The notes below the pieces were generated by a model, which worked only from the letters and a program-made list of their open reading frames with translations, made no database searches and was not told the DNA's origin. From positions 62,001-126,000 of the IMG/VR virus record IMGVR_UViG_3300036770_007547: a stretch of DNA of 64,000 nucleotides; one strand, 5' to 3'. The translations under genes were made by a program, and so were the position numbers. Positions 21,645 to 48,343 of this stretch are shown piece after piece (position 1 is the first letter of the stretch; every line of letters begins with the position of its first letter).

Positions 21645-23012
21645 CTATTTTTTTGCTAGTTCTAGGAGTCTTGCTAGATGCCGCTCGATGCTTTCGCTGC
21701 TCATGTTGGATGGTCGTGTCATCATGACACCGTCGGTGTCGAGATTTTCATCGGTGGGTTGCTGATTGTCGGGAATGTCAATGTCTATGCCTAGTTCGGA
21801 TAGCCGATCCTGGATCAACGGGCGTGCGTCTGCGTCTGCGTCTTTTTTTGCCAACTCACCGAGGCGATCAAACAACTCATCGTCGCCCAATATCCCGTCT
21901 AGGATGGAAGTGACATTGGATGCATCTGGGCCCACTGGCAAAGGTTGGGCCAGGAGTTCTTCCAATTGTTTCCGGGATTGTGGAGTGTCTGGTAACGCCC
22001 ATGTGCCTTCCAGCATGCGTTGGGTCCAAGAATCAAACTCGTTGACTTCTTCCATGTAGTCGCTGTCACTGACAGCCTGGCCAGACAGTGTGCCAGCCAC
22101 TCTCGCCAACACCGGCAATGCTTCTTCGATGCGATGATCGATGTTTCTCTCTACAAACATGTTGCGTATGTTTTCTACTTCGGGCTGGGTGGAATCGACT
22201 GCGGATGGATCAAATTTTTCTCGTTCTTCGCGATAACCTCTTTGGCCCAGCATTTTCCTGGTCTTGGTTTTCAAGGCCTGATAATGACGTATGGCTGCTT
22301 CACGCACTCGATTGGCTTTTTCATCGTAGTCGCGCTTGTCACTGGCACGCAAAAATCTAGACAGCACCGACAACTCGTTCACCATTTCATTGATGTGATT
22401 GCCGAACAGATCATAGGGGGTACCACCTTCGCTGACGTGTCGGGCCAACAGTTTACCATGGGTGAGATTGCGGCTGGGCACACGAAAACGCTCGCCTTCG
22501 GCTGTTTCAATGAACAAACTTTCGATGGCACGATATCTAGCTTCGCCCTCGCCGAGGTCACGAGAATGCTTGATCATGAGTCGTGTCTGCTTGGGCTGGT
22601 CGCTGTAGCTGATGTTTTTCTTCTTGCCATAATAACCTTCGAACAAACCTTCACGTATGGCGGCCATGCCCTTCATGGTATATTTCAAACGATTGAGATT
22701 GTTGACCCGGAAGTTCAAGAGATTGCGTGTAGAAAACTTTTTGATCTGTTCCAGGAACGCATACCATTGCTGTTTGTCATCGCCTTCCATGCTCTTGCCG
22801 AGATTGTCACCAAAATAAAGCTCGACACTGTTGTTGTTGTCAAACAAGATCACCACTGTGCCGTAGTTCTTGGCCGGAGTTTTCCAATCAAATGACAGCA
22901 ATTCAGCTTCACTGGGATCTTCCACGGGTTTGCCCGAGCTGTCTAGAGTCTCGATGTCTAGATCTCGTGTCACCAATAGATCAAAGAGTTCTTTTTGCGG
23001 CGTGTTTTCCAT
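21645..23012 (-). CDS. Hypothetical (probably head-associated) protein downstream of the terminase
   Basis: 455-aa ORF with its own TAAATA promoter; LFE/MLE sites and C-terminal RLLELAK motif shared with the internal-protein block. Confidence 0.7.
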   Translation of the reverse strand: MENTPQKELFDLLVTRDLDIETLDSSGKPVEDPSEAELLSFDWKTPAKNYGTVVILFDNNNSVELYFGDNLGKSMEGDDKQQWYAFLEQIKKFSTRNLLNFRVNNLNRLKYTMKGMAAIREGLFEGYYGKKKNISYSDQPKQTRLMIKHSRDLGEGEARYRAIESLFIETAEGERFRVPSRNLTHGKLLARHVSEGGTPYDLFGNHINEMVNELSVLSRFLRASDKRDYDEKANRVREAAIRHYQALKTKTRKMLGQRGYREEREKFDPSAVDSTQPEVENIRNMFVERNIDHRIEEALPVLARVAGTLSGQAVSDSDYMEEVNEFDSWTQRMLEGTWALPDTPQSRKQLEELLAQPLPVGPDASNVTSILDGILGDDELFDRLGELAKKDADADARPLIQDRLSELGIDIDIPDNQQPTDENLDTDGVMMTRPSNMSSESIERHLARLLELAKK

Positions 23013-23018
23013 ATGTGT

Positions 23019-23024
23019 TATTTA
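23019..23024 (-). promoter_or_regulatory. Late promoter core TAAATA, 6 nt before the ATG
   Basis: CATAAATA-ACACAT-ATG; no SD. Confidence 0.7.
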
Positions 23025-23026
23025 TG

Positions 23027-24592
23027 CTACATGACAACAACAAAGGGCAAGGGCTCGATGATGCTGTCCTGGTGATCACGCATTTGTGCGTCTAGGTCAG
23101 TGTGGTAACTCTGCAAAACCTGCAACATCCTTATCACGAGGATGGTAGACATGACCAAATCGTCGGTCTCGCCTGCTTTGGCTGCATAACCAGCGCCCGA
23201 TGCCACAAAGTTCTTGAGTTCGCTCACCAAATTCCGGCTGTGTATCTTCATGCGGCCGCTTTCCACGAGATTTTTTAGTTTGGCACATGCAGCGAGTTTG
23301 GGCTTGTTGGTGGTGTTGAATCCTTTGCGGAATCTACGGGAGCCGCCCGCACCGGGTTCGCTGAGGAAGTAGCCCGGAATATTTTCTTCTCCGTATTCAG
23401 CTATGGATATCAAGGCAGCTTCGCCGATGCTGTTGTTTTCTACCGAATAATAGATACCACTGGGATTCTGTACCACATCATTGATATGGACCATGATGTC
23501 TCGCAAGATCCTGATCTGCGTGGGTATGTCAGTGCGATTGTGGCGCCATTCGGCCACCTGCTCGGTGCTGTTGGCTTCATAGACTTGGATGGCTGCAGGA
23601 TCACCGCCAGTGCCCAGGCTGGGATCCAGTCCAATCACGTAGATACGATCTTTTTGCGGTTGCTTGTACCATCGCACTTCACCGGTTTTGTAAATCGGAT
23701 CATGCCCTTCGAGATCCACCAATTTGGCGGGTGCGATCAATGTTTCATCTGCGATGATGAATTCGCAGTCCATTTCGCGACGGAATCGATCCACGCCCAA
23801 TGCTGCCCGTTGTTGCTGTGCCCAAGTTTCATCGCGATCAGGGTGTTCGTTCCAAAAAGCCCGATAAGCACGGAATCCGTTCATGCCAACTTCGGTGGGA
23901 TTTCCGTATTCATCGATGCATCGGTTGGCACCTTTCCACAAGAGGGCGAACTGATCCTCGTCGCTGTTGGGTGTTGATGTGATGATGGCTTTACCGCCTG
24001 TGGCCAATGTGGGCGAGATCGAAGTCCAGAATTCCGTGGCTATGGTGGGTCGCACGAAGGCAAACTCGTCAGCGTAGAGCAGCGAGATACTCATGCCTCG
24101 GCCAGTGTTTTCAGTTGTGGTCTGGCTCACGATCCTGCTGCCGTTGTCAAACTCCAGGCTGCCTTTGTTGTAGCTGGTTACACCTGCACGGATATGATCT
24201 GGACAGTTTTCATAGGCATATCGCACACGTTGCATGATCTCTTGTGCGCCGAGATATTTGTGTGCTGCTACCAGGATGGTAGAGTCGGGTATGAACATAG
24301 CATACCACAAGAGATACCCGGCCGCAGATGTTGACTTACCAGTCTGCCTGGGCATCATGGATATGCTGAATCGATACTGGTGATAGGTGTCTATGAGCCG
24401 ACGTTGATATTCAAACGGATGGTACTGCATGCGTCCCCGGGTGGGATGCTGTATGTAAAAGAAGTTGTCCATGAAGTACATGGGCCCGGTATCGGGATCA
24501 GCACAGGCCGCGAACTCTCGTATCTGCTCGTCGGTGTAGATCGAGCTTTCGTGCGGATTTTTGATGAGGGCGACTTCGGTGTTCTTGGCCAT
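23027..24592 (-). CDS. terL: Terminase large subunit (T4 gp17-like)
   Basis: PRQTGKS Walker A, LLYADEFAFV Walker B, ITSTPN, GLDPSLGTGGD, DDLVMS. Confidence 0.96.
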   Translation of the reverse strand: MAKNTEVALIKNPHESSIYTDEQIREFAACADPDTGPMYFMDNFFYIQHPTRGRMQYHPFEYQRRLIDTYHQYRFSISMMPRQTGKSTSAAGYLLWYAMFIPDSTILVAAHKYLGAQEIMQRVRYAYENCPDHIRAGVTSYNKGSLEFDNGSRIVSQTTTENTGRGMSISLLYADEFAFVRPTIATEFWTSISPTLATGGKAIITSTPNSDEDQFALLWKGANRCIDEYGNPTEVGMNGFRAYRAFWNEHPDRDETWAQQQRAALGVDRFRREMDCEFIIADETLIAPAKLVDLEGHDPIYKTGEVRWYKQPQKDRIYVIGLDPSLGTGGDPAAIQVYEANSTEQVAEWRHNRTDIPTQIRILRDIMVHINDVVQNPSGIYYSVENNSIGEAALISIAEYGEENIPGYFLSEPGAGGSRRFRKGFNTTNKPKLAACAKLKNLVESGRMKIHSRNLVSELKNFVASGAGYAAKAGETDDLVMSTILVIRMLQVLQSYHTDLDAQMRDHQDSIIEPLPFVVVM

Positions 24593-25243
24593 TTACTTGA
24601 CGTCCACGGATCTCCGTCGAGTACACACAAACACAAAAAATTTTTCAGTCCAAGTTTCACTGTCATCCTGGAACTTGAGTGGCATTTGATAATCATACCA
24701 TTCCACGTCAAACCCGGTTCTTTGCAGCAGGCTCAACCACATGGTACGCCCAAACACGCTGTAATGATTCTGATTGTGTTCGTGTGGCCGTTCGTTGTCG
24801 GGCTGCGGGACCTCGATGTAGAGCTTGCCTCCGGGCCTCAGCACTCGATTGAACTCGAGCAAGGTGATGAAGGGGAACGGACTGTGCTCGATGCCGTGGC
24901 GACAAAACAAAAGATCCACGCTTTCGTCGGCTTCTTGCAGGAAGTTGAAATCGGTCATGCGCACTGGCAACTGCTGGGACTGGCAGGTTTCAAAGTCATC
25001 AGGGCTGAGAGTGATTCCCGTGAGATTGGTATACCCTCGCTGTCTCATGTCTTCGAGAAAGTAACCGGGACCACAGCCTAGATCTAGTATTTTGGCATCG
25101 GCTTTGAGTTTCATGGGCTCCACAAATTTGGAAATCACATCTTTGGTGATATGACGATGCGCTGGACTGATGCCTTCGCTGTAAACTTGGGTGAGCACAT
25201 GCTCGTAATAAAATCTCAGTTTGACTAAGTCTAATTGGTTCAT
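24593..25243 (-). CDS. Class I SAM-dependent methyltransferase
   Basis: ILDLGCGPG, DLLFCRHGIEHS, RVLRPGGKLYIEVP; resembles 8181..8945. Confidence 0.88.
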   Translation of the reverse strand: MNQLDLVKLRFYYEHVLTQVYSEGISPAHRHITKDVISKFVEPMKLKADAKILDLGCGPGYFLEDMRQRGYTNLTGITLSPDDFETCQSQQLPVRMTDFNFLQEADESVDLLFCRHGIEHSPFPFITLLEFNRVLRPGGKLYIEVPQPDNERPHEHNQNHYSVFGRTMWLSLLQRTGFDVEWYDYQMPLKFQDDSETWTEKFFVFVCTRRRSVDVK

Positions 25244-25269
25244 TTGGTTCCGCCGTAAAAGTAGTGCGA

Positions 25270-25482
25270 TTATTTAACGGGCCGCTCACCGGTGAGGTAA
25301 GGAAGACTGAACCACAATTGGAACCATTCGGGAGTTCCGGGTTGGATGTTTTGATCTCGCATGATACGAGCTTTTTCAGTGCCGGTGTAGCTGATGTTGC
25401 TACCAGCAGTGGGTCGAGACGGAGGTTGGGAGTAGACCCCTTGGCCTACTCCGCTGAGACGTCGCAGCTCATCCAGTGTCAT
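25270..25482 (-). CDS. Small hypothetical protein
   Basis: MTLDELRRLSG...IQPGTPEWFQLWFSLPYLTGE; ATGA overlap with the nuclease stop. Confidence 0.7.
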   Translation of the reverse strand: MTLDELRRLSGVGQGVYSQPPSRPTAGSNISYTGTEKARIMRDQNIQPGTPEWFQLWFSLPYLTGERPVK

Positions 25483-25904
25483 TGGCACCAGCTGGATTTT
25501 TTCTCGCCGTGGTAAGGGCGCGCCAGGCCGTTGGCTATGAGACCTTGCGTGAGATCCTGTCCGCCCACGCGAACTGCGCCCAGGATACGACCACCATATT
25601 TGTCCCAACCGACGATGTCTATCTCTACCGGCTGACCTGAAGCGATGAGGCTCTTGGTATAAGCCGACGCACGTTCAGCCAAGGCAGCCTCTTGTGGGCA
25701 TTGGGCACGATGTCCTTTTTCCGGCGTATCTACGCCCAAGACTCGTATAGAAAGTTTTTGTTTGAGTTCGGGTGGAAGGAAGCGTGCTTCGATTTCGATG
25801 GTATCACCATCGATCACTCTCAACACTTTGACCGGATAAGGATTGGCCGTCGCCGAGGACATCATTGAAACCGAGATCATTGCTGCTAGAAAAAATTTTT
25901 TCAT
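25479..25904 (-). CDS. Thermonuclease (SNase-like) with an N-terminal signal peptide
   Basis: RVIDGDTI, IRVLGVDTPE, DKYGGRIL, LIANGLA; MKKFFLAAM...ATA signal. Confidence 0.9.
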   Translation of the reverse strand: MKKFFLAAMISVSMMSSATANPYPVKVLRVIDGDTIEIEARFLPPELKQKLSIRVLGVDTPEKGHRAQCPQEAALAERASAYTKSLIASGQPVEIDIVGWDKYGGRILGAVRVGGQDLTQGLIANGLARPYHGEKKSSWCQ

Positions 25905-25919
25905 CGTGATTCCTTTCTG

Positions 25920-27599: not shown

Positions 27600-27605
27600 T
27601 GGGGT

Positions 27606-27923
27606 TTAACCCCCTGCTGGCTGTGTGGGCGGAGTAAAGATGGCAGCGAGTTTGCGTAATCGATCAATCTCTTGATCAGATGCTAGTTCTTGGGTTTGTT
27701 CGGGAGTGGGTTCTTCGGTGACATCATCTGTGGTGGGACCCACAGCATCGCGCATGATATCCAGCTGTTGTTGCAAGGGCGTGCTCCAGTTGGCTCGGCC
27801 ATCTTCACCATAGCTGATGCCAGGATTTACAACAGCGGGTTTTTCTTCGGTGGGAGACATCACGATCACATTCATGTTCTGTATGTTTACTGAACCAGAT
27901 CCTAGTATATCTTTGATGTTCAT
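27606..27923 (-). CDS. Small hypothetical virion protein (paralog of 29717..30058)
   Basis: MNIKDIL..., PLQQQLDIMRDAVG, RLRKLA; TAAGTA 6 nt before the ATG. Confidence 0.65.
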   Translation of the reverse strand: MNIKDILGSGSVNIQNMNVIVMSPTEEKPAVVNPGISYGEDGRANWSTPLQQQLDIMRDAVGPTTDDVTEEPTPEQTQELASDQEIDRLRKLAAIFTPPTQPAGG

Positions 27924-27932
27924 TTATTATAC

Positions 27933-29708
27933 TTATGCCCAGTTTCCTATTGAGACATTGGCCCCAGTGGCACCAATAGGCCAAACTTCGATACTGGATC
28001 CGGCAGTGACTAAACTTCCGGCACCGGGCAAGCCGGTGAATCCGATCTGCGGGAACCAGGTGCCGCCTGTGGTGACATTTATCTTGCCCTGTACAGTGAG
28101 ACTGTAATAGCCAGCACCATTGAGTGATGCAGTGACAGTGACCGCAGTGCCAAAATTGGTGGTCAACACATTGCGCACCACGTTGGGCGCGGTGAGAGTA
28201 CCCAAGCCCGCAGCAGCAGTAGTCAGGGTCTCGTAGGTGTGTCTGGCCAGGGTAGCAGTACCACCTAGAGCATACTGCAAGGCGATGTTGTTGGCAGTCT
28301 TGTATACGGTAGATTGAATGCGGTAGGCATATCGGGTGTTTGAACTCAAGGTCACGCTGGCGCCCAGCAGGGTCTGCGGCGCGGTCTGATCCACGATGTT
28401 GTAGTCCGCGTTGATCACGTAGATCTGTTCGGTGACTATGAGACCGCGCTCGCTGTCTTGTGGTGTGGCATAGAACACGCGACCATCATAGTTCATGCCG
28501 CCTGCGATGGGAGAGGTGGTGACCACTCCTGTGGTAAACACCAGAGGTGCTATGTTGGCCGTGCCCGCTGGCAAGGTCACATAAGAGTTTACATTACCAG
28601 CTGAAATGTTGCCAGTGGTGGATATCAAGCCGGTGCTGGATATCAACCCACCATCGCTGAGTATGAGGTTCCCACCTGCGATGTTGCCCGTGGCAGTGAT
28701 GTTGCCAGCAGTATTGAATTGCGTGGCAGTGACACCGTTGGCCACTGTGATATTGGCCACATCTACTCTCGATGTAGCTGCTGATCCCACTGGGGTCACA
28801 GTAAACACAATTTCACTGCCTTGTGCTGTGGCAGTTTGATTTTCTAGAGCCGCCATTGAGATCTGTGCCATGGCCACATTGCCCACATTGCCGCCACCGG
28901 CATTGGTGGCCGCAGTGGCATTGATGCGTAACACATCTTGGCCGGCCAGCACCTGTGTGGGTGCGGTCACATTGCCGTTCCAGCGCCGTGCCACCCATGA
29001 TACATAGTCGCCGTTGCCGTCGTAGTAAAGGCGGCAGGGTGTGTCTAGCTGCCCGGTCACATGCAACATGGTACCCGGTGTGCCCGGAGCGATGGAATTG
29101 CCTGTGGTGGATCCCACGATTTCCACTGCACCCAGTAAGGGATCAGTGTTGGAGACCAAGATACTAATCTGTCCATCATTGGATGCCTGGAAATAACGAT
29201 TGGCCACATTGGGCGGCAAACCGTTGGTTCTATAAAATCCTATGTTGCCGATCAACTGTATTTCTGCCGAACCTTGTGTGGCCAAGATCATGTTCTCATC
29301 TAGATTCACTATGGTCAGCACATTGTTGTTGGCAAAGAAGTTACCAAAGCTCACTGGTAAGTTGGCCGAGTCGATGGTGAGCAGCCCGATGTTGCTGATT
29401 TCAACACCGGGACCGGGTATGATACCACCGATCTTGTTGGTGGATGCAGGTGATATATTGCCGGAAATGACGAGATTGCCTGTGACTGTGATATTGCCTG
29501 ATGTGGATGTTACGGCATTGAGTGTGACTGTGTTAGCCGTGATGTTGGCACCAGTGGCCAGGTCCACAGGAATACCTCCCACAGTGGCGCCGTCTGATGC
29601 ATAAAGGCTGTTGGTGTCGGGATTGTACCACAGGCGGCCCAGCTGGCCTACATAGGTGTTGCCATCAAGGTTGTTGTCACGGCTGGTAAAAAAATTCTGG
29701 ATGGCCAC
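27933..29708 (-). CDS. Virion fibre-like protein with an Mtd_N-like N-terminus
   Basis: MAIQNFFTSR...YVGQLGRLWYNPDTN..Y.SDG.T.GG; G/T/N-rich beta repeats. Confidence 0.65.
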   Translation of the reverse strand: MAIQNFFTSRDNNLDGNTYVGQLGRLWYNPDTNSLYASDGATVGGIPVDLATGANITANTVTLNAVTSTSGNITVTGNLVISGNISPASTNKIGGIIPGPGVEISNIGLLTIDSANLPVSFGNFFANNNVLTIVNLDENMILATQGSAEIQLIGNIGFYRTNGLPPNVANRYFQASNDGQISILVSNTDPLLGAVEIVGSTTGNSIAPGTPGTMLHVTGQLDTPCRLYYDGNGDYVSWVARRWNGNVTAPTQVLAGQDVLRINATAATNAGGGNVGNVAMAQISMAALENQTATAQGSEIVFTVTPVGSAATSRVDVANITVANGVTATQFNTAGNITATGNIAGGNLILSDGGLISSTGLISTTGNISAGNVNSYVTLPAGTANIAPLVFTTGVVTTSPIAGGMNYDGRVFYATPQDSERGLIVTEQIYVINADYNIVDQTAPQTLLGASVTLSSNTRYAYRIQSTVYKTANNIALQYALGGTATLARHTYETLTTAAAGLGTLTAPNVVRNVLTTNFGTAVTVTASLNGAGYYSLTVQGKINVTTGGTWFPQIGFTGLPGAGSLVTAGSSIEVWPIGATGANVSIGNWA

Positions 29709-29716
29709 CGTTTTTC

Positions 29717-30758: not shown

Positions 30759-30759
30759 G

Positions 30760-31041: not shown

Positions 31042-31058
31042 TTATTATAGTTCCTTTC

Positions 31059-35291: not shown

Positions 35292-35813
35292 TTATTTATC
35301 AGAACCGTTGTTTTCGCGATCACCCAATATAGATCTCAACAGTTCGTTGCGATTGAGCACACGCCCTTCGGCGCTTGGCAATGATGCCTTGTCTGATGGT
35401 TCTACCTGATCCAGTCTTGCTTTTTTGAGCTGTAGATCAATCATCTTGAGTTTCTTGTTCATCTTGGCTGTCTTGGCTGTGATGGCATGTCCCAACATGG
35501 TACCGGCCACGGCAAAGATTTCTGATGCGTATCTCGAATCCACCTGCATGCCCAATGTCATGAGCTCGTCAAAACTCTCCTGAGCCTTTTTAGCGAGGTC
35601 GTCCATCTCGTTGTCTGACGATTCCAGACCACGCACCGTGGGCAAGGCTTCTTCGATTTTGTCAAGTGCTTTGAGTGTTTCGGGAAGTATGGGCAGATTG
35701 TTGGCGAGGTCGTCGGCCGGCTCGGCCTGGTCTGAATCTTCGGGTTCGGGATTGTCTGATGATCTTGGAAGATCAAACAGTTCTTCGAGGTTGTGATTAT
35801 TTGCAAGGGCCAT
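35292..35813 (-). CDS. Helical protein, putative terminase small subunit (gp16-like)
   Basis: LEELFDL..., ELMTLGMQVDSRYASEIFAVA..ML, coiled-coil, C-terminal NRNELL. Start set 4 nt after TAAATA. Function is inference. Confidence 0.45.
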   Translation of the reverse strand: MALANNHNLEELFDLPRSSDNPEPEDSDQAEPADDLANNLPILPETLKALDKIEEALPTVRGLESSDNEMDDLAKKAQESFDELMTLGMQVDSRYASEIFAVAGTMLGHAITAKTAKMNKKLKMIDLQLKKARLDQVEPSDKASLPSAEGRVLNRNELLRSILGDRENNGSDK

Positions 35814-35820
35814 GCGGTAT

Positions 35821-36258
35821 TTACCGCTTTTTGGCACCGTTGCGGAACAATGAATCTTCGTTGAGCACTCGGAACACTATGCCAGCACGCCGGCACCAGG
35901 CCTGGGCTGCCTGCCATTTGGCGTGATTTATGGCCACCACCATGCGGTCTCGTTCGCTCATCTTGCCTTCGATGAGACTCTGCTTTCTCGGTTTGATCTC
36001 AATGATCTCGGTGCATATCTTGTTGTTGCGAGTGCGATATCGCATGAACACATCGGGCACATAACTTGACATCTTACCGGTCAAGGGGTTGCGGTACTTG
36101 ATGGCTATGGCTTCGCTGGCCCATTCCAGCACAGCATCGTTGTTGTCGCAGAACTGGAAGAAACTCCACTCCCATCCTGATCGATAACGAGGATTTCCTT
36201 TACCTACATATTTCTGTGGATTCTTTGGCACGAATGTGCCCTGGGCAAAGTTGCTCAT
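35821..36258 (-). CDS. gp4: Head completion nuclease (T4 gp4 / TnsA-N-like)
   Basis: PKNPQKYVG..., YRSGWE..F..FCD.N..VLEWASE, YVPD, EIKP, N.AKWQAA. Confidence 0.9.
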   Translation of the reverse strand: MSNFAQGTFVPKNPQKYVGKGNPRYRSGWEWSFFQFCDNNDAVLEWASEAIAIKYRNPLTGKMSSYVPDVFMRYRTRNNKICTEIIEIKPRKQSLIEGKMSERDRMVVAINHAKWQAAQAWCRRAGIVFRVLNEDSLFRNGAKKR

Positions 36259-41947: not shown

Positions 41948-41979
41948 AGTTGCTTCCTTGTAAAAAAGTTTGTCCTTGA

Positions 41980-41985
41980 TATTTA
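41980..41985 (-). promoter_or_regulatory. Late promoter core TAAATA for the sheath gene
   Basis: CATAAATA in the divergent intergenic region. Confidence 0.75.
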
Positions 41986-42042
41986 TGAAAAGCCGATAAA
42001 ATCAGGCCGTTACGATAGCCTACATATAGGTTTAAATACAAG

Positions 42043-42387
42043 ATGAGACCGTTATGTAGCGTTTGCAACAGCAATTTCCGGGCAGTGGCGTACCACAAGT
42101 ATGACCGCGTCTACTATCGCAGTCGTTGTGATTCATGCATACGCAAAGGAAAGAAACTCAAGAAGGTGCAACCCAGATGGGTTCGTGCTGGATATCAAAA
42201 AAAGAAACAGTGCGACCGCTGCCGTTTCATAGCCCGGCACACATCACAACTGTTGGTGTATCACGTAGATGGTAATCTCAACAACAACGAACTGAGAAAT
42301 CTCAAAACTATTTGCTTGAATTGCTCGGTGGAAATCACTAAGATGGATCTGCCTTGGAAGCGCGGAGATCTTGAACCAGATCATTGA
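42043..42387 (+). CDS. Small Zn-finger/HNH-like protein
   Basis: CSVC, CDSC, CDRC...YHVDGNLNNN..RNLKTICLNC; TAAATA at 42033-42038. Confidence 0.75.
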   Translation: MRPLCSVCNSNFRAVAYHKYDRVYYRSRCDSCIRKGKKLKKVQPRWVRAGYQKKKQCDRCRFIARHTSQLLVYHVDGNLNNNELRNLKTICLNCSVEITKMDLPWKRGDLEPDH

Positions 42388-42979
42388 CTTGGGCATACAA
42401 GTCGTCAAGGCTGCCGTTGTTGTCGATCACACGATCAAAGTCGGTACCAATCCACGAAGTTTCGCTGGCATGTACTCCTAGATTTTGCAAGGCCACGGCG
42501 GCAAATTCTACGCCACTATTGGCCGATTCGGCGATGCTGTACCAGTCAGGATCTGGGCCACGTTTCACACGGATCACAGCACCGCCTTGGGCACGGATGG
42601 CACGGATCTCGTTGGGGAAACGACAGTCCGAGATCACAACATCGTCCTGTGCTGTGCGTAGTTTGTTTTCCAAACTGGCTATCCAGATGTCATCGTGGAA
42701 TCCACGTCGACATACTTCTGTGCCCCAATGTTGTAGGATATAGCGTGGGGTGATCTCGCGACCCAAGCGACGACTCCACCATTCATCGGGCTGTTCTCTC
42801 CATTCCCGACTGCTCTTGGTGCGACCCTCTAGCATGGTACGATCCCAGCCAAACACCGCGGCGCACGCATCTTTCAAAGTGGCTGCAAAACTGTCCCTGC
42901 GGAACTCATGGATATTCACGAGATAATCGGCGATGGTATCTTTTCCAGCCCCGATGAGACCACACACTCCAATGATCAT
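42338..42979 (-). CDS. gp1: Deoxynucleoside monophosphate kinase (T4 gp1-like)
   Basis: MIIGVCGLIGAGKDT, SFAATLKD, TPRYILQHWGTE, ISDCRFPNE, HASE. Confidence 0.92.
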   Translation of the reverse strand: MIIGVCGLIGAGKDTIADYLVNIHEFRRDSFAATLKDACAAVFGWDRTMLEGRTKSSREWREQPDEWWSRRLGREITPRYILQHWGTEVCRRGFHDDIWIASLENKLRTAQDDVVISDCRFPNEIRAIRAQGGAVIRVKRGPDPDWYSIAESANSGVEFAAVALQNLGVHASETSWIGTDFDRVIDNNGSLDDLYAQVNDLVQDLRASKADPS

Positions 42980-43620
42980 TGCAACTTCTCCTGTATGAAT
43001 TTTGCAAAAGCCCAATGGGCTTCGAGTTCGTAATGTTGTTCTATGCGTTTGAATCCGTGAGTGTCACAGAAATCCACCCAGCTGGGCAAAACCAGATTGT
43101 TTTGTTTCAGGCATCGATGCAAAGAGGTATCCCCGGGCACCTGATAGCTGAAACCAAATCTCCAGTCAATGTTTTTGCTGTCAAGATACTGTTGCAAAGC
43201 CAGCATTTGCACCACGCTGTGTTCGCGAAACCATTCGTCATCAAACTGATCACGGAATATGCTTTGTGCCAACACATGCATCAAAGCACCGTTGTTGTTG
43301 AGACGAGGATGCAGCTCTATGGCATTACCGCTGTTCAACGAAAAATAACGAGATTTTAGATCGCGTTCCTGCCAGAATGGTATGGCCAATTCCAAACGAT
43401 CGAAGTGGCTCCATTGAATGTACACAAAATCGTAGTGATGTTCCTCGAGATGTTGCACAGTGCGGCGGCGTATGCTGTCGTTGCTGCTGCCGGCCTGGGC
43501 TATGTTCACGACCTGCCAATCCGCAACATAGTTGGGCCAAGTCAATGTCGGACTCACTTCGGCATCTTCGTGTAATTCGCAACCTTGCACATGGCTGCAT
43601 CCGTTGACCAACACTTTCAT
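42976..43620 (-). CDS. SGNH/GDSL hydrolase-like hypothetical protein
   Basis: NGCSH block I, NIAQAGSSND block II, IQWS, C-terminal HY...AH. Confidence 0.55.
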   Translation of the reverse strand: MKVLVNGCSHVQGCELHEDAEVSPTLTWPNYVADWQVVNIAQAGSSNDSIRRRTVQHLEEHHYDFVYIQWSHFDRLELAIPFWQERDLKSRYFSLNSGNAIELHPRLNNNGALMHVLAQSIFRDQFDDEWFREHSVVQMLALQQYLDSKNIDWRFGFSYQVPGDTSLHRCLKQNNLVLPSWVDFCDTHGFKRIEQHYELEAHWAFAKFIQEKLQ

Positions 43621-44150
43621 GTGAGTTCACGTATGTTGAGATGTTCGAGGGTATCATGCAACATCACAATCTGTCGCCGACAGTCTTCGAGGGCATTGTG
43701 AGTGGCCGGTGGTTTTGGCACTCCCGGCCATAGGCTGTAAACTGTTCGAGCATCGCGCACACGGTAATATTTCCAAGGCAGGGCCATGCCAGCTTCTTTG
43801 TAAGCATGCTCGAGTATGTTGGCATCAAAAGTGGGACCATTGGCCCAGAACCTATTGCTGTGCCAGATCATCCGGCCCAGTTCTTCCAGACTTTGTTTCA
43901 ACGAAATACGATCGTGGTCTCCAAACGCTTCGTCTTGTATGTGTTTGGGTTGTTGGCTCCACCAGGCCAAGGTGTCGTCCTGTACTCGCCGAGAAGGCTG
44001 GCTTTCGGGATCAATCCTGGCATAGTAGCTGATCCAGTTTTCCCAATCGCAATGCCGATTGAGGGGATCAAATGTCTGCGCTGCGATTGTGATTATGCAG
44101 GCCTCGGGTCCTGTGCCCAAGGTTTCGATGTCGATCATGATATCAGCCAT
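43617..44150 (-). CDS. DEDDh 3'-5' exonuclease (RNase AS-like)
   Basis: IMIDIETLG, WANGPTFD, PWKYY.VRDART, HNALED. Confidence 0.88.
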   Translation of the reverse strand: MADIMIDIETLGTGPEACIITIAAQTFDPLNRHCDWENWISYYARIDPESQPSRRVQDDTLAWWSQQPKHIQDEAFGDHDRISLKQSLEELGRMIWHSNRFWANGPTFDANILEHAYKEAGMALPWKYYRVRDARTVYSLWPGVPKPPATHNALEDCRRQIVMLHDTLEHLNIRELT

Positions 44151-44156
44151 GCTGGG

Positions 44157-44185
44157 ATTATAGCATGACTTGGGAAGCCAGTCTA
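44157..44185 (-). promoter_or_regulatory. Sigma70-type early promoter, leaderless transcript
   Basis: TAGACT-17 nt-TATAAT with TG extension; ATG 6 nt after the -10 box. Confidence 0.75.
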
Positions 44186-44464
44186 GCGATAAAGGTTGAG
44201 TAGTTTGAGCAGTTTGGCCTTGGGATTTATCCGCTTGGTACGCTTGGCCTTGCGTGCCTGTCGAACCTTGGTGCGCTGGCGTGTTTTTTTCATGCGTTGT
44301 GCTTGGGCAACATCTGGCGCCGACGAACAGTCGGACACCTTGGGCACTGTACGGTTGCGCCTAGGACCAGATTCACAGCGCCAACGCAGGGTCACTTTGC
44401 CGGTCTTGGGATTCCGCCGCCACACCATGCGATGCTCGTCCAAGATGAATTCGCTGGCTCTCAC
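44183..44464 (-). CDS. Small very basic probable internal head protein
   Basis: MRASEFILDE N-terminus (GTG start), R/K-rich, RC.SGPR..R.V. Confidence 0.65.
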   Translation of the reverse strand: MRASEFILDEHRMVWRRNPKTGKVTLRWRCESGPRRNRTVPKVSDCSSAPDVAQAQRMKKTRQRTKVRQARKAKRTKRINPKAKLLKLLNLYR

Positions 44465-44467
44465 AAA

Positions 44468-45229
44468 CTATCCTATCACAAAAGTCAGTGGTTGGCTGCC
44501 ATCCACATAGAGTTTGAGATCTTCTATGCACCGGTCCATCATGGCCTGGCCTTCGCTCTTCATGGCAGCACCATTGAGCGCTGTACCACCCTGTGGGCCT
44601 GCGATGCTGGCAAATTTTTCGCGAGCTTCGCCGATGATGTATTTGGCTGCACCCACCATGTAATCACGAAACCACTGCGAGATCTGATAGTCGCTCAACA
44701 GCGTGATTTCGGGCTTGAGATTGTAGGTCCACAACAACACCACTTCGTCGTTGCCGCGCGGATCGCGTATGAGTTGCAGCTTCTTGGTCACCGGATTCCA
44801 GGTATAGTTGATGTAACCTCCAAACATCCTGGCAGCCAGTTCCACATATTGCTGATAAAAGTCATATGTGGCCATTCCGCCCGATGCTTGGTTGAAATTG
44901 AGTAGATACACGTTGAGTGTGGCTGCGCCAAATGGGTCGAAACTGTAGCCACCTACACCAGTGATACCAATGGTTCTACGGAAAATCTGGCGCACTTGAG
45001 TGACTTCTTGTGGCAATGTGTACACGTTCACGTCATCCTGCAACTGCAAGAAACTGTAGCTCTCTTCGTAGGCGTTTTGAGCTCGTTGGCGATATGTGCC
45101 TAGGGTTTTCTGATAGGCTGCTTCGAGGTGTGCTGGGTCTAGCTCGATGTCGATGATGCCATCACCCAGTTCGAGTCTCACATACTCGAGCAGTTGGCTT
45201 TTGAGGGGTTCTAGTGTTTGATCTGCCAT
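44468..45229 (-). CDS. gp13: Neck protein (T4 gp13-like)
   Basis: LGDGIIDIELD, YTLPQEV..V, GEAREKF.SIAGPQGGTALNG, P..FVIG. Confidence 0.88.
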   Translation of the reverse strand: MADQTLEPLKSQLLEYVRLELGDGIIDIELDPAHLEAAYQKTLGTYRQRAQNAYEESYSFLQLQDDVNVYTLPQEVTQVRQIFRRTIGITGVGGYSFDPFGAATLNVYLLNFNQASGGMATYDFYQQYVELAARMFGGYINYTWNPVTKKLQLIRDPRGNDEVVLLWTYNLKPEITLLSDYQISQWFRDYMVGAAKYIIGEAREKFASIAGPQGGTALNGAAMKSEGQAMMDRCIEDLKLYVDGSQPLTFVIG

Positions 45230-45230
45230 A

Positions 45231-45264
45231 GTGGGCTCCGTGTGGTATTTAGCACGGAGCCCAC
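45231..45264 (-). promoter_or_regulatory. RBS-sequestering hairpin with a late promoter in the loop
   Basis: Perfect 12-bp stem gtgggctccgtg/cacggagcccac; loop reads CTAAATACCA on the minus strand; the mRNA 3' arm contains the GGAG SD and ends 1 nt before the gp13 ATG. Confidence 0.8.
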
Positions 45265-45269
45265 ACGGA

Positions 45270-45491
45270 TTAACCCTGGCTTACAAACTTGTTGAGTTTT
45301 TCAGCTTCGGCCAGCACACTGTCAGTGCTGGGAAAATCCGGCAAGGCAGGAAATGGTGCCTGTTTGTCGGTTTCAAACCGGCAGTGATATTCCTGTATCA
45401 AGGCCTCTCGGCGTTGGAATACTGGCGTTGTGAGTACTTCGTTGGCCAGCTTGAGGAGTTCGAGACGGATCTCGTAGGGTGTTTTGCTCAT
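45270..45491 (-). CDS. Small phage protein of the 'PYEIRLELL' type
   Basis: MSKTPYEIRLELLKLA...AEKLNKFVS; AAGGAG SD preceded by a CA-rich leader. Confidence 0.75.
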   Translation of the reverse strand: MSKTPYEIRLELLKLANEVLTTPVFQRREALIQEYHCRFETDKQAPFPALPDFPSTDSVLAEAEKLNKFVSQG

Positions 45492-45544
45492 GGTAGTCTC
45501 CTTTCTGTGAGTGTGTGTATGTGCTACACGAGCATGTTTAGTTA

Positions 45545-46693
45545 TCATTTGACTCGCAGGATCACTAAATTTTCGTTGCCACGACCATTCCATTTGATCT
45601 CGGTGGCTTTGATGTCCTTGAAGAACTTGCGAGCATTGGGCACCGATGCTGCCATGAGAGTCTTGAGCTGTTCAGCGGGTTTCCTCAGTGTTTTTTGCAG
45701 TGTTTGTGCGGTATCAAGTCCAATGAGGCCCGAACCTTTTACTGTGAAACTGCCCACATGAGAATCTGCCACAGCATGTATCAGCTTGCGTTTTTTGACA
45801 TCATACAACCAGGCTTCGCTGGCACCCACCAAGCGAGCGGCTGTCTCACTGCGCAATTTGAGCTCGGCATCTTCCACCAAGATTTTGAACCCGCGTGCTA
45901 TGACCTCGGGAGGTTTGGCCTTCTTGGCTCTGGGTTTGCGTTCCACTTTCTTGAGTTGTCGATAACTGTTGCAATCGGCGATCACTTGTTCCACGAACTT
46001 GATCATGCCGCGTATCTGCAATTTTCCAAAATTTCCGTAGCCCTCGACCAGTTGCGCATCTCGACCTTCGGCCACGGCTTCGAGTTCTTCCAGCCGTTGT
46101 TGCCAAAGTCCAGCGATGTCTCCCACCATCTGCGGTGACACATTCATGCCGCGCAATACTGTGATGGGTTTGAAGTCGGCCGACATCTTGCAGCCAGCCC
46201 GTAACATGTCATCAAACATGCCTTCTAGCTCGCCTGCGGCCTCCATCATCTTTTCACGCAAACGATCCTGGATAGTGATCTTGGGTACGATGGGTTCGTC
46301 CACGGCTTTGGTGACTTCTTTTACGGATAACGCGGCCTGGCACTGTTGAGAAACATGATCGTTGACATAGAGCAGTTCGCGATCCGAGAGGGCAAGGCCC
46401 ATGAGACTCATGCGACTCAGCCAAGCAGCCTGCAAGCTCACCGAACTGTCAGGTACACGATGATAGTTGCGGGCATCTTTCTGGCGATCGTTGCGTGTGA
46501 GCCAATCAATCAAAAAATTCTTGGCATCCTTTTTACCATAGTGGTAGTTGTACCAAGTGAACGCTCCGATGACCTGGCTCATGCGCTGTTCGGCTTCGGG
46601 TTGTGCTCGCCACTGTGGTTCCCCGCCAGTGTATTTGGTTTCGTGCGATTTGGGCTGTAAAGGTTTCACGGGTTTGAGTGCAGTCGCAGTCAT
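45545..46693 (-). CDS. Hypothetical early protein
   Basis: 382-aa ORF; WYNYHY, QLVEGY, KTLRKP, NGR.NEN motifs as seen in large T4-like phage proteins. Confidence 0.75.
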   Translation of the reverse strand: MTATALKPVKPLQPKSHETKYTGGEPQWRAQPEAEQRMSQVIGAFTWYNYHYGKKDAKNFLIDWLTRNDRQKDARNYHRVPDSSVSLQAAWLSRMSLMGLALSDRELLYVNDHVSQQCQAALSVKEVTKAVDEPIVPKITIQDRLREKMMEAAGELEGMFDDMLRAGCKMSADFKPITVLRGMNVSPQMVGDIAGLWQQRLEELEAVAEGRDAQLVEGYGNFGKLQIRGMIKFVEQVIADCNSYRQLKKVERKPRAKKAKPPEVIARGFKILVEDAELKLRSETAARLVGASEAWLYDVKKRKLIHAVADSHVGSFTVKGSGLIGLDTAQTLQKTLRKPAEQLKTLMAASVPNARKFFKDIKATEIKWNGRGNENLVILRVK

Positions 46694-46962
46694 CTTGGCT
46701 CCTTGTTCATTAGTTTAGCCATCAATATGTGTCCTTCGAAATTCTTCAGGGCTTCGTCGGCTTGGGCGAGAAGATCGTTGAAGCGCGGGCTTCCGGTGCC
46801 TCGCCGTCGGCAATTGACCCATTCGGCATTGGCCTGGTTCAGCATTTTTGAGATCGCTCGATGCCAGATCCAGAATTCTCTGACACCTATTCTCATGCCA
46901 ACACAGTTGCGATGAGCTTGGTCCAAACGATCATGCAATTTTTGCCAATCTTCCAGGTCCAT
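46690..46962 (-). CDS. Hypothetical early protein
   Basis: 90-aa ORF directly behind a sigma70 promoter; ATGA overlap with the next gene. Confidence 0.7.
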   Translation of the reverse strand: MDLEDWQKLHDRLDQAHRNCVGMRIGVREFWIWHRAISKMLNQANAEWVNCRRRGTGSPRFNDLLAQADEALKNFEGHILMAKLMNKEPR

Positions 46963-46967
46963 GTGCT

Positions 46968-46996
46968 ATTTTAGCATGATCATCGTTTCCGGTCAA
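46968..46996 (-). promoter_or_regulatory. Sigma70-type early promoter, leaderless transcript
   Basis: TTGACC-17 nt-TAAAAT with TG extension; ATG 5 nt after the -10 box. Confidence 0.8.
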
Positions 46997-47004
46997 GCCG
47001 TCCA

Positions 47005-47010
47005 TAAATA
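47005..47010 (+). promoter_or_regulatory. Late promoter core TAAATA, 7 nt before the gp14 ATG
   Basis: CATAAATA-CAGAACT-ATG; no SD. Confidence 0.75.
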
Positions 47011-47017
47011 CAGAACT

Positions 47018-48343
47018 ATGCCCAGACTCAGTCTTTATCGTCCCAATCGCACCAATGATTACCGATTTTTGGATAGAACTATTTCGGAAATGTACACAGT
47101 GGGCGGAGTGGACATCTACGTCCACAAATACATGGGACCAAAAACCGGCGGCGAAGATTCTGCCGAAAGCGGCAACTACGATGCCACGCAGCCGATTTAC
47201 AGCAACGAAAACCCCTTGTTCATACAGGATCTCTTGTTGCTGGAAAATCGAGACCGAGCCTACGATCCCGATGTCTATCGCTTGCGCGGGGTTTACAATA
47301 CCCAAGACATAGATTTCAACCTCAGCCAGTTTGGCCTGTTCTTGCAGAATGATACCTTGTTTATCACGTTCCACTACAATGACATGATCGACACCATCGG
47401 CCGCAAGCTCATGAGCGGTGATGTGTTAGAAGTGCCCAACCTGCGCGACATGCATCCGCTTGACACCACTATCGCAAAAGCCATACCCAGATACTACGTG
47501 ATACAAGAAGCCAATTATGGCAGTGAAGGATTCAGCCAGACTTGGTTGCCGCACCTGTGGCGTGTGAAAGCCACACCCATGGTCAATGCACAAGAATACC
47601 AGGATGTGCTCAACAAACCGTTCGTGCAGGATCAAATCTGGGATCCGGGCAATTTTTATCCTGCAGGTTCCATAGTCAACTACGGCGATGTTTACTATCA
47701 AGCTCGAGTGGACGTGCCCGTTGACACCGAAATCACTGACACCAACTATTGGCGAGAGATTGATCCTCCCACGCAAGAAGAAAAAGTCACTACCAGACCC
47801 AAAGATCTTGAAATCAACGATGCCATCTTGGCACAAGCCGAGATCGAAGTCCCGCTTTCGGGCTACGACACAGTAAAGTTTTACATCTATCCCACGTTGG
47901 AAGATGGTACTCCGGCACCGCCCCAGGCCCTGTCTGTGGATGATTCACAGGTCACTATTGACAGCAGTGGCACCAACGTCACCCAAGCATCTGCCACGCC
48001 ACAGAGCGATGGCTATACCATGGGCTATCTCACTGGAGATGGCATCGCTCCCAACGGCTTGCCGGTGACGCCGGGAGTGAGCTTCCCTTCCAACCCTTAC
48101 GAAGGCGACTATTGTTTGCGGCTGGACTATTTCCCCAACCGACTGTTCCGATTCAACGGCAAAGGATGGATCAAGATCGAGGACAATGTACGCACTGACC
48201 TCACCAACGGTCCGGCCAATCAGACCCTGCGCTCGAGCTTTGTCAACAACGACAACACGGTGCCGACCACGGATCGCGGCGACATACCCAGCCGTCAGAG
48301 TCTCAGCGAGATTCTCAAACCACGAGCCGACAACGGAGGCTAA
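47018..48343 (+). CDS. gp14: Neck / head-closure protein (T4 gp14-like) with insertions
   Basis: GGVDIYVHKY, IQDLLLLENRDR.Y, LSQFGLFL..D.LFITFH, GDVLEVP; upstream of the gp15-like gene. Start MPRLSLYRP. Confidence 0.75.
   Translation: MPRLSLYRPNRTNDYRFLDRTISEMYTVGGVDIYVHKYMGPKTGGEDSAESGNYDATQPIYSNENPLFIQDLLLLENRDRAYDPDVYRLRGVYNTQDIDFNLSQFGLFLQNDTLFITFHYNDMIDTIGRKLMSGDVLEVPNLRDMHPLDTTIAKAIPRYYVIQEANYGSEGFSQTWLPHLWRVKATPMVNAQEYQDVLNKPFVQDQIWDPGNFYPAGSIVNYGDVYYQARVDVPVDTEITDTNYWREIDPPTQEEKVTTRPKDLEINDAILAQAEIEVPLSGYDTVKFYIYPTLEDGTPAPPQALSVDDSQVTIDSSGTNVTQASATPQSDGYTMGYLTGDGIAPNGLPVTPGVSFPSNPYEGDYCLRLDYFPNRLFRFNGKGWIKIEDNVRTDLTNGPANQTLRSSFVNNDNTVPTTDRGDIPSRQSLSEILKPRADNGG

What the first reader, a model, noticed from the sequence alone, without database searches (positions are those of the whole stretch)
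23012..47020. Recurrent leaderless mRNAs from both late and early promoters
Late cores lie only 4-7 nt before start codons with no SD: 23012 (6 nt), 27923 (TAAGTA, 6 nt), 35813 (4 nt), 42043 (4 nt), 47018 (7 nt). Two sigma70 promoters do the same: 44150 (6 nt after -10) and 46962 (5 nt). Initiation would fall on or next to the A of AUG. Inference: such genes would be translated poorly from read-through RNA, giving tight temporal control, and the host probably handles leaderless mRNA well. Other genes here (sheath, tube, uvsX, gp32) use normal SDs.
Basis: partly seen in the sequence, partly recalled or inferred. Interest (0 to 1): 0.6.

Follow-up and report, generated by a model that had tools for sequence, protein, structure and literature searches.

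The report
Promoters fused to start codons
In this uncultured ~350-kb jumbo phage and hundreds of its environmental relatives, about one gene in ten has its promoter only 4-8 bases before the ATG with no ribosome-binding site, so these genes are most likely expressed from leaderless mRNAs; no RNA data were available to prove it.

Summary
All seven sites exist as described. The evidence is comparative and statistical only, because no RNA data exist.

- **Statistics.** Genome-wide (222.8-kb IMG/VR record), 19 of 77 TAAATA hexamers lie 4-7 nt before an ATG. That is 25%, against 7.5% for permuted hexamers, and the reversed pattern gives 0.
- **Real gene starts.** Most of these ATGs open real genes. 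TAAATA is the only non-Shine-Dalgarno (SD) hexamer strongly enriched just upstream of first ATGs.
- **Spacing.** Promoter-to-ATG distances are bimodal. There is a peak at 4-8 nt, a gap at 9-14 nt, then SD-led leaders of 15 nt or more. Sigma70-type promoters show the same split.
- **Conservation.** Orthologues of five of the seven genes keep the arrangement while the spacer sequence drifts. Their N-termini are conserved from Met-1.
- **Switching.** For the 47018 gene, relatives whose promoter sits further away carry an SD (52/0 versus 1/11).
- **Clade limits.** Phage T4, Atu_ph07, Phosso, PA5oct and 121Q show no enrichment. All but T4 have an orthologue of the 47018 gene, and in each it is SD-led.
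- **Late sigma factor.** A gp55-type late sigma factor is encoded.

Site 27923 (TAAGTA) is unverified. The temporal-control and host inferences are untested.

Verdict: a clade-specific variant of a known phenomenon, leaderless phage mRNAs.

The parts
23019..23024 (-). Late-type core TAAATA, 6 nt before ATG 23012, inside the 14-nt gap after the terminase large-subunit gene (23027-24592)
   Evidence: Orthologues in G001-G005 all have TAAATA-N6/7-ATG, with A at the 5th spacer base.
21645..23012 (-). 455-aa virion structural protein gene (phrog_13484). No SD and no upstream in-frame start.
27930..27935 (-). Non-consensus TAAGTA, 6 nt before ATG 27923. Its TAA is the stop codon of the upstream gene. 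Status unverified.
   Evidence: TAAGTA is the commonest one-mismatch variant at d=4-8, but only 3 of 100 genome-wide. The ORF 27606-27923 has no homologue.
35818..35823 (-). Late-type core TAAATA, 4 nt before ATG 35813. Its TAA is the stop of the upstream gene. It is flanked by GCGG/CCGC.
   Evidence: 76 of 80 relatives have TAAATA-N4 (65) or N5 (10), plus one with two copies. Support for the stem is weak.
35292..35813 (-). 173-aa gene (phrog_16202, function unknown). The true start is ATG 35813, not the upstream GTG 35837.
   Evidence: N-terminus M-x-x-x-LEELFDL is conserved from the Met in relatives.
42033..42038 (+). Late-type core TAAATA, 4 nt before ATG 42043, in a divergent intergenic region
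   Evidence: 61 of 79 relatives have TAAATA-N4/5-ATG, and most of the rest differ by 1-2 extra codons.
42043..42387 (+). 114-aa Cys-rich protein gene (MRPLC...). No same-strand gene lies upstream.
47005..47010 (+). Late-type core (cA)TAAATA, 7 nt before ATG 47018, in a 55-nt divergent intergenic region
   Evidence: 64 of 78 relatives have d=4-8 (43 at d=7), with spacer consensus NNNNACT.
47018..48343 (+). 441-aa virion structural protein gene (phrog_11591), next to the tail-sheath gene in relatives. The start is 47018, not the in-frame ATGs at 46961 or 46976.
   Evidence: The profile aligns from residue 3. tblastn matches start at residue 1.
44157..44185 (-). Sigma70-type promoter TAGACT-N17-TGcTATAAT, 6 nt before ATG 44150
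   Evidence: 37 of 39 close relatives have a TAnnnT hexamer ending 4-6 nt before the ATG.
43617..44150 (-). 177-aa DEDDh 3'-5' exonuclease gene (PF16473, E 5e-32). MADIMIDIE is invariant from Met-1.
46968..46996 (-). Sigma70-type promoter TTGACC-N17-TGcTAAAAT, 5 nt before ATG 46962
   Evidence: The same arrangement (d=5-6) is seen in relatives L009, L019, L023, L024, L045, L051, L053, L066 and L073.
46690..46962 (-). 90-aa ORF of unknown function (MDLEDW...) with a weak coding score
18221..18250 (-). Further sigma70-type promoter TTGACG-N18-TATACT, 9 nt before ATG 18211 (gene 17165-18211), leaving a leader of about 2-3 nt.

Best explanation
The window comes from an uncultured jumbo myovirus with a genome of about 350 kb, distantly related to Atu_ph07, PA5oct and Rak2.

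**Two promoter classes.** A phage gp55-type late sigma factor probably directs host RNA polymerase to the minimal late promoter (A)TAAATA. Host sigma70 probably reads TTGACx-N17-TAnnnT promoters.

**Promoter position.** In roughly one gene in ten, either kind of promoter sits so that the expected transcription start coincides with the A of the ATG or lies 1-3 nt before it. The expected start is the 5th-6th nt after TAAATA, or the 6th-8th nt after a -10 hexamer.

**Consequence.** These mRNAs are leaderless or nearly so. They carry no SD, and ribosomes must initiate on the 5'-terminal AUG. All other genes have leaders of 15 nt or more with a canonical AAGGAG-type SD.

**Shown:** the motif positions, their statistics, their conservation, the mutual exclusion with SD, and the presence of gp55.

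**Inferred:** that TAAATA is the gp55 promoter here, where transcription starts, and that translation is leaderless.
For: 1. **Enrichment.** TAAATA-N4-7-ATG is strongly enriched in G000 (19, against 0 for the reversed pattern) and in five relatives: 33/16, 35/13, 35/8, 13/0 and 9/0.
2. **Unbiased test.** TAAATA is the only non-SD hexamer strongly enriched in the 14 nt before first ATGs, about 35x in G000 and 33x in the complete relative G001. 53 of 77 TAAATA lie just upstream of ORF starts.
3. **Bimodal spacing.** Both genomes and both promoter classes show an empty zone: 9-14 nt for TAAATA and 10-17 nt for -10 hexamers. Leaders too long to be leaderless and too short to hold an SD would fall there.
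4. **Geometry.** The T4 consensus TATAAATA spans -13 to -6 (PMC2988020), so +1 is the 6th nt after the last A. This matches d=4-6.
5. **Conservation.** In 35-80 relatives for each of the four genes scanned in IMG/VR, and in five genomes for the 23012 gene, the arrangement is kept while spacers vary. N-termini are conserved from Met-1.
6. **Evolutionary toggling.** For the 47018 gene, 52 unique promoter-adjacent upstream regions have no SD. Of the 12 non-adjacent ones, 11 have an SD (Fisher 1.6e-11).
7. **No coupling possible.** About half of the late-type cases have no abutting same-strand upstream gene. Some follow obvious terminator hairpins, so translational coupling cannot serve them.
8. 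**Late sigma factor.** A gp55 homologue is present (phrog_12791, E 2.5e-77; T4 gp55, E 4e-6) in G000-G003.
9. **Gene classes fit.** Sigma70-type cases are a helicase and an exonuclease. TAAATA-type cases include baseplate and virion proteins.
Against: - No transcript 5' ends are available. Only DNA runs hold this sequence.
- For d=6-8 sites the conserved A at spacer position 5 implies 1-3-nt leaders, which in E. coli lowers leaderless translation (my own knowledge).
- About half of the sites lie inside operons, 25 nt or less after an upstream gene. There, re-initiation by terminating ribosomes could also translate them.
- No gp45-type clamp was found, although that search had no positive control.
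- The ortholog counts are not phylogenetically independent.
- The promoter role of TAAATA in this clade is inferred from T4 and from predictions in Rak2-like phages (PMC5259590). It has not been measured.
Confidence: 0.77

Rival explanations
1. TAAATA next to the ATG is an SD-independent translation signal on longer polycistronic RNAs. It would act as an A/U-rich unstructured or S1-binding element, or as an aid to re-initiation after the upstream stop codon, rather than as a promoter used at that position.
For: 7 of 15 (G000) and 9 of 26 (G001) late-type cases sit 25 nt or less after a same-strand gene. At 35813 and 27923 the TAA of the motif is the upstream stop codon.
Against: - The same exact hexamer occurs 15-40 nt upstream of SD-led genes, where it cannot act on the start codon.
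- One-mismatch A/T-rich variants are not enriched: 3% or less, against 14.7% for TAAATA.
- About half of the cases have no upstream gene or follow terminators.
- Sigma70-type promoters show the same spacing rule.
- The position of the upstream stop varies among orthologues, while the TAAATA-to-ATG distance does not.
Confidence: 0.1
2. The start codons are mis-assigned. The true starts are other codons with SDs, and the promoters give ordinary leaders.
For: My gene caller and the ORF listing give longer alternatives for 35813 (GTG 35837) and 47018 (ATG 46961 and 46976).
Against: - No SD precedes any alternative start, upstream or within 60 codons downstream, except one TTG in the 27923 ORF.
- Protein conservation begins exactly at the proposed Met in hundreds of orthologues, and upstream sequence is not conserved as coding.
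- 11 of the genome's cases have no in-frame upstream start at all.
- PHROG profiles align from residue 1-3.
Confidence: 0.04
3. The pattern is chance or a compositional artefact. Stop codon TAA plus A/T-rich intergenic DNA happens to precede ATGs.
For: Two of the five late sites overlap a TAA stop. The genome is gene-dense, with short A/T-richer gaps.
Against: - Permuted hexamers of the same composition: 1.7% against 16.9% at gene-opening ATGs (p=6e-10 in G000 and 2e-14 in G001).
- The reversed pattern gives 0 against 19.
- The motif is conserved at fixed distance across relatives with 56-80% protein identity.
- There is no enrichment in five related or T4-type genomes that also use TAAATA.
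Confidence: 0.02
4. Transcripts start further upstream and are cut by an endoribonuclease at or after the TAAATA motif. This would produce leaderless mRNAs by processing rather than by initiation.
For: None directly. The T4 late-transcription review cautions that some mapped T4 late 5' ends could be processing products (PMC2988020).
Against: Sigma70-type promoters with -35 and TGn elements show the same spacing. A gp55 homologue is present. The sites after terminators and in divergent gaps have no evident upstream promoter.
Confidence: 0.05

Closest known systems
Thermus phages phiYS40 and Lalka27a, whose middle/late or most transcripts are leaderless
   Same: Large lytic phages whose class-specific -10-like promoter elements sit directly before start codons. 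Many transcripts begin with the A or G of the initiator codon (PMC3594737; bioRxiv 10.64898/2026.04.20.719267).
   Different: - Different phage lineage and promoter: a TAGGGT-type late -10 in Lalka27a, against gp55-type TAAATA here.
- The Thermus host phylum is itself rich in leaderless genes (PMC12340547).
- There most transcripts are leaderless. Here it is about 10% of genes, alongside strong SDs.
- In phiYS40 the ends were mapped experimentally. Here they are inferred.
T4-type late transcription (gp55, TATAAATA) and the ATAAATA late motif predicted in Rak2-like jumbo phages (CBB, GAP32)
   Same: A gp55 homologue and the same core motif with no -35 element, preceding structural genes (PMC2988020; PMC5259590).
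   Different: T4, Atu_ph07, Phosso, PA5oct and 121Q show no enrichment of TAAATA-N4-7-ATG. In the four jumbo phages the orthologue of the 47018 gene has a 20-27-nt leader with an SD. No paper in the library holds both 'leaderless' and 'TATAAATA'.
Lambda cI mRNA from PRM, and other single leaderless phage genes
   Same: A sigma70 promoter whose +1 is the A of the AUG. This resembles 44150 and 46962. It rests on my own knowledge, and lambda cI is cited within PMC12340547.
   Different: Those are isolated regulatory genes. Here the arrangement recurs in 6-10 early-type genes per genome, including replication enzymes, and also in the late class.
'-10 region adjacent to ORFs' in Deinococcus-Thermus
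   Same: The same architecture, a -10 motif at a fixed short distance from the start codon, with expression lost if the gap is shortened too far (PMC12340547).
   Different: That is a cellular, phylum-wide trait read by the housekeeping sigma. Here it is viral, clade-specific, and shared by two promoter classes.
Jumbo phages phiKZ and AR9
   Same: Jumbo phages with mapped TSSs, used for comparison.
   Different: No leaderless transcript was detected in the early-infection TSS map of phiKZ (PMC8244752). AR9 UTRs are 26-491 nt (PMC5312081). Both use their own RNA polymerases.

Membership tests
Leaderless mRNA (functional class) | The primary 5' end lies at, or within a few nt of, the start codon | not testable with these tools
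   No RNA run holds the sequence. Only promoter geometry is available.
Leaderless mRNA (functional class) | No SD and no room for one between promoter and start codon | tested here: met
   The spacers are 4-7 nt, with no SD-like 4-mer at -17..-4 at any of the seven sites. 0 of 52 promoter-adjacent orthologue upstream regions have an SD.
Leaderless mRNA (functional class) | The start codon is the genuine one, and is ATG | tested here: met
   N-termini are conserved from Met-1 for five of the seven genes. For 27923 this could not be tested.
T4-type (gp55-dependent) late promoter | TATAAATA-like core about one helical turn upstream of +1, with no -35 element | tested here: met
   The core (A)TAAATA is invariant. 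A is preferred at the position before it, and nothing is conserved near -35. 53 of 77 copies lie directly upstream of ORF starts.
T4-type (gp55-dependent) late promoter | The phage encodes a gp55 late sigma factor | tested here: met
   G000:C1:155305-156183(-) matches phrog_12791 'sigma factor for late transcription' (E 2.5e-77) and T4 gp55 (E 4e-6). It is also present in G001-G003.
T4-type (gp55-dependent) late promoter | gp45 sliding clamp and gp33 co-activator | tested here: inconclusive
   Pfam DNA_PPF (PF02916) found nothing in G000-G003, but it rang in no control genome either. gp33 was not searched. Rak2-like phage CBB is also reported to lack detectable gp33 and gp45 (PMC5259590).
T4-type (gp55-dependent) late promoter | Late timing and dependence on gp55 | not testable with these tools
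   There are no expression data. The only indirect support is that the downstream genes include virion and baseplate proteins.
Sigma70-type promoter | -35 TTGACA-like, a 16-18-nt spacer, -10 TATAAT-like, and an optional TGn | tested here: met
   44150: TAGACT-N17-TGcTATAAT. 46962: TTGACC-N17-TGcTAAAAT. Both are conserved in relatives.

The most novel reading that the evidence does not exclude
In this widespread environmental jumbo-phage clade, promoter placement itself defines the translation start for about 10% of genes. The clade has repeatedly switched individual genes between 'promoter-fused, leaderless' and 'SD-led' states. A phage-encoded ribosomal protein bS21 sits behind a TAAATA promoter with an SD in G000, and is also encoded in G002 and G003. 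It might remodel host ribosomes late in infection to favour the phage's leaderless late mRNAs.
Probability: 0.1. Interest if true: 0.8.

Novelty: new variant of a known kind. Interest (0 to 1): 0.58.

Why it matters
- **New combination.** Leaderless phage mRNAs are known, but I found no report for T4-type (gp55/TATAAATA) late promoters or for Rak2/Atu_ph07-like jumbo phages.
- **Clade-specific and dated.** Here the trait is conserved across hundreds of metagenomic relatives and is absent from the cultured cousins. This dates a shift in expression strategy and gives natural paired examples (leaderless versus SD-led orthologues) for testing what each architecture buys.
- **Better annotation.** Gene callers that rely on SDs will mis-place these starts, for example 35837 instead of 35813 and 46961 instead of 47018.
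- **A clue to the host.** The trait may hint at an unknown host that translates leaderless mRNA efficiently, or at ribosome modification by the phage.

Tried and rejected
- **RNA evidence.** The look-up of sequencing runs returned only DNA (metagenome) runs, one of them probably the source sample.
- **Megablast against cultured phages.** No match.
- **Orthologue scans.** The search for related loci found nothing for the 23012 and 27923 proteins. The 23012 gene was rescued by searching five related records. The 27923 ORF was not.
- **Stem around TAAATA at 35813.** Only marginal support: 68.8% of cells paired against 62.5% shuffled, with 4 of 500 shuffles reaching the covariation score. It is not claimed.
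- **Host identification through the phage bS21.** The best hits are short contigs in Chitinophagales and Polynucleobacter MAGs, probably mis-binned phage. The rest are scattered across phyla. No host call is made.
- **IF3_C.** Not found in G000-G003.
- **gp45 Pfam family.** No hit, but no positive control either.
- **phiYS40 primary paper (PMC1885378).** Not held. It is cited through secondary sources.
- **SD-versus-promoter exclusion for the exonuclease orthologues.** Not significant with my crude SD regex (p=0.10). By eye, the distant clade carries SD-like AAGGTGG and no -10 hexamer.

Full report
**What the window is.**
The window is bases 62001-126000 of a 222,775-bp IMG/VR virus record (51% GC, CheckV 64% complete). 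It has no close match among cultured phages. The virion protein encoded at 47018-48343 has its best cultured relatives in Agrobacterium phage Atu_ph07 (35% identity), Sinorhizobium phage Phosso, PA5oct, XaC1 and the 121Q/Rak2 group. IMG/VR holds at least 598 relatives at about 70-80% identity, including complete genomes of 343-353 kb. So this is a member of a large uncultured clade of jumbo myoviruses. It is only remotely T4-like. The only run that holds the stretch (0.99 of its words) is a subsurface metagenome, probably the source sample. Lagoon and aquaculture metagenome runs hold small shares, and no RNA run holds it.

**Check of the observation.**
All seven sites are exactly as described. 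None has an SD-like 4-mer between -17 and -4. No in-frame downstream candidate within 60 codons has one, apart from a TTG at codon 50 of the 27923 ORF.

**Genome-wide statistics.**
- The record has 77 TAAATA hexamers. 53 of them lie directly upstream of an ORF start, although more than 90% of the DNA is coding.
- 19 of the 77 are followed by ATG after 4-7 nt (24.7%). The 14 permuted A4T2 hexamers give 7.5% (p=3e-6).
- Restricted to ATGs that open a called gene of at least 50 aa, the rates are 16.9% and 1.7% (p=6e-10). The reversed pattern occurs 0 times.
- Most of these ATGs open ORFs of 55-540 aa. Eleven have no in-frame upstream start at all.
- An unbiased count of hexamers in the 14 nt before the first in-ORF ATG returns SD hexamers (AAGGAG and similar) and, as the only other strongly enriched word, TAAATA. 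This is 12 of 218 genes (35-fold) in this record and 29 of 389 (33-fold) in the complete relative G001.
- Single-mismatch variants are not enriched. TAAATA stands at 14.7% of its copies, the best variant TAAGTA at 3%.

**Spacing.**
For gene-opening ATGs the TAAATA-to-ATG distance is bimodal in both genomes. There is a peak at 4-8 nt (15 in G000, 26 in G001). Almost nothing falls at 9-14 nt (3 in G000, 1 in G001). A broad mode follows from about 15 nt upward, and those leaders carry SDs.

Sigma70-type promoters behave the same way. These were defined as a -10 hexamer with at most one mismatch plus either TGn or a -35 element. They peak at 5-7 nt (6 in G000, 10 in G001), have none at 10-17 nt, and show a second mode from 18 nt. 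A forbidden zone of leaders too long to be leaderless and too short to hold an SD is what the leaderless reading predicts. It is hard to explain otherwise.

The geometry also fits. The T4 late consensus TATAAATA runs from -13 to -6 (PMC2988020), so +1 is the 6th nt after the last A. With d=4-6 the A of the ATG sits at or next to that position.

**Conservation.**
- *47018 gene.* 64 of 78 relatives have TAAATA 4-8 nt before the ATG (43 at 7 nt). Spacer sequences vary and the protein begins MPRLS in nearly all.
- *35813 gene.* 76 of 80 relatives have TAAATA-N4 (65) or N5 (10), plus one with two copies. The protein is conserved from the Met, while the upstream stop codon moves about.
- *42043 gene.* 61 of 79 relatives have N4/5. 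Most others differ only by one or two extra codons.
- *23012 gene.* All five related genomes examined have TAAATA-N6/7-ATG at the orthologue.
- *44150 exonuclease.* 37 of 39 close relatives have a TAnnnT hexamer ending 4-6 nt before the ATG, usually with TGn and a -35-like element. MADIMIDIE is invariant from Met-1, and the DEDDh motif begins at residue 6. A distant clade (36-39% identity) lacks the hexamer and has SD-like AAGGTGG instead.
- *46962 ORF.* The small ORF keeps a TAAAAT/TATAAT-N5-6-ATG arrangement in at least nine relatives. Others carry a different, SD-led gene at that place.
- *27923 ORF.* It has no detectable homologue. That site remains unverified.

**Toggling and clade specificity.**
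Among unique upstream regions of the 47018 gene, 52 have the promoter adjacent and none of these has an SD. Twelve have it further away or absent, and eleven of those have an SD (Fisher 1.6e-11, not corrected for phylogeny).

The pattern TAAATA-N4-7-ATG exceeds its reversed control in all five related records: 33/16, 35/13, 35/8, 13/0 and 9/0. It does not in T4 (16/20), Atu_ph07 (36/56), Phosso (8/6), PA5oct (39/58) or 121Q (22/46). In those four jumbo phages the orthologue of the 47018 gene has TAAATA followed by a 20-27-nt leader with GAGG, GGGAG, AGGAG or GGAG. The late motif is therefore shared across the wider group, while fusing it to start codons is a derived trait of this clade.

**Machinery and gene classes.**
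- A gp55 homologue lies at G000:C1:155305-156183(-). It matches phrog_12791 'sigma factor for late transcription' (E 2.5e-77) and T4 gp55 (E 4e-6), and it is present in G001-G003.
- A gp45-type clamp was not found, but that search had no positive control. Rak2-like phage CBB is likewise reported to have gp55 and an ATAAATA motif but no detectable gp33 or gp45 (PMC5259590).
- TAAATA-fused genes include virion structural proteins and a baseplate wedge subunit.
- Sigma70-fused genes include a DNA helicase and the exonuclease.
- These classes are as expected for late and early genes respectively.

**Mechanism and caveats.**
The best-supported reading is that transcription starts on or 1-3 nt before the AUG, and that ribosomes initiate without an SD.
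- For d=4-5 (35813, 42043) the A of the ATG is itself the expected +1.
- For d=6-8 (23012, 47018) the 5th spacer base is A in 29 of 41 unique spacers of the 47018 gene and in all six versions of the 23012 gene. The likely RNAs therefore begin AU-AUG or ACU-AUG.
- About half of the late-type cases have no abutting same-strand upstream gene. Some directly follow terminator hairpins, for example genome 135258, 211487 and 215693. Translational coupling cannot explain those.
- The other half sit 25 nt or less behind a gene and could additionally be translated by re-initiation on read-through RNA.
The host could not be identified.

**Comparison with what is known.**
- Thermus phage phiYS40 makes most middle and late transcripts leaderless, and Lalka27a does so for most transcripts (PMC3594737; bioRxiv 10.64898/2026.04.20.719267).
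- A -10 element adjacent to ORFs is a phylum-wide habit in Deinococcus-Thermus (PMC12340547).
- phiKZ (early-infection map) and AR9 have no leaderless transcripts.
- The PA5oct omics paper does not mention any.
- No paper in the library combines 'leaderless' with 'TATAAATA'.

I therefore rate this a new variant of a known kind: leaderless expression driven by gp55-type late promoters as well as sigma70 promoters, in a specific and abundant clade of environmental jumbo phages. The evidence is comparative and statistical only.

Noticed in passing
G000:C1:25322-25477 (-), outside the window (locus L376:1453-1674, -): The phage encodes a 73-aa ribosomal protein bS21 homologue (PF01165, E 1e-16, above the cut-off). 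It lies 27 nt behind a TAAATA, with an AAGGAG SD, just downstream of a ClpX-like gene. It is also present in relatives G002 and G003, but not in G001. A link to translation of the leaderless mRNAs is pure speculation.
   Followed up: partly
window 35814-35827 (-): The TAAATA before ATG 35813 is flanked by GCGG/CCGC. Relatives show partly compensating arms, such as CCCTA..GGGT and CCCGG..CGGG. Support is marginal: 68.8% paired against 62.5% shuffled. If real, the stem would exist only in read-through RNA and would abut the AUG.
   Followed up: partly
window about 42000-42030 (+), between the divergent TAAATA at 41985(-) and 42033(+): One or two short palindromes (here GGCCGTTACG... and CCTACATATAGG) are conserved in position in relatives, with changed but still palindromic sequence: CCTATATATAGG, CCTTAATTAAGG, CCTTACGGTAAGG and CCTACTTAGTAGG. 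They could be a bidirectional terminator or a protein-binding site. This was not analysed.
   Followed up: no
loci L011-L013, L016, L017, L025, L026, at the start of the orthologue of window 47018-48343: In these relatives the conserved N-terminus begins with ATT instead of ATG and is preceded by a good SD (AAGGGAGAA). In L012, L013, L016 and L017 the old TAAATA-N7-ATG is still present about 45 nt upstream and out of frame. This looks like an apparent ATT start codon created when an insertion separated promoter and gene.
   Followed up: no
G000:C1 at about 5323, 7301, 7608, 7947, 31731, 32335, 32822, 60158, 60412, 212848, 214720 (all -), outside the window: There is a repeated early-promoter-plus-leader cassette. 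It reads cggTTGACCagaaat...TATAATatag.ata.agtaaacaa.AAGGAGc, followed about 6 nt later by the ATG. Both the promoter and the 5' UTR of about 25-30 nt are conserved between copies.
   Followed up: no
window 35837 versus 35813, and 46961 versus 47018: 'Longest ORF' calling over-extends both genes (GTG 35837, ATG 46961). Orthologue alignments place the starts at 35813 and 47018. In the 46961 reading, the plus-strand ATG would overlap the minus-strand ATG 46962 within a CATG palindrome.
   Followed up: yes
genome 145874(+)/145897(-), which is window 83874/83897 and outside the window; G001:144803-144840 and G001:280555/280572: Pairs of TAAATA motifs face each other on opposite strands, 16-25 nt apart, and serve divergent genes. 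In G001 two promoter-fused genes start only 16 nt apart.
   Followed up: no
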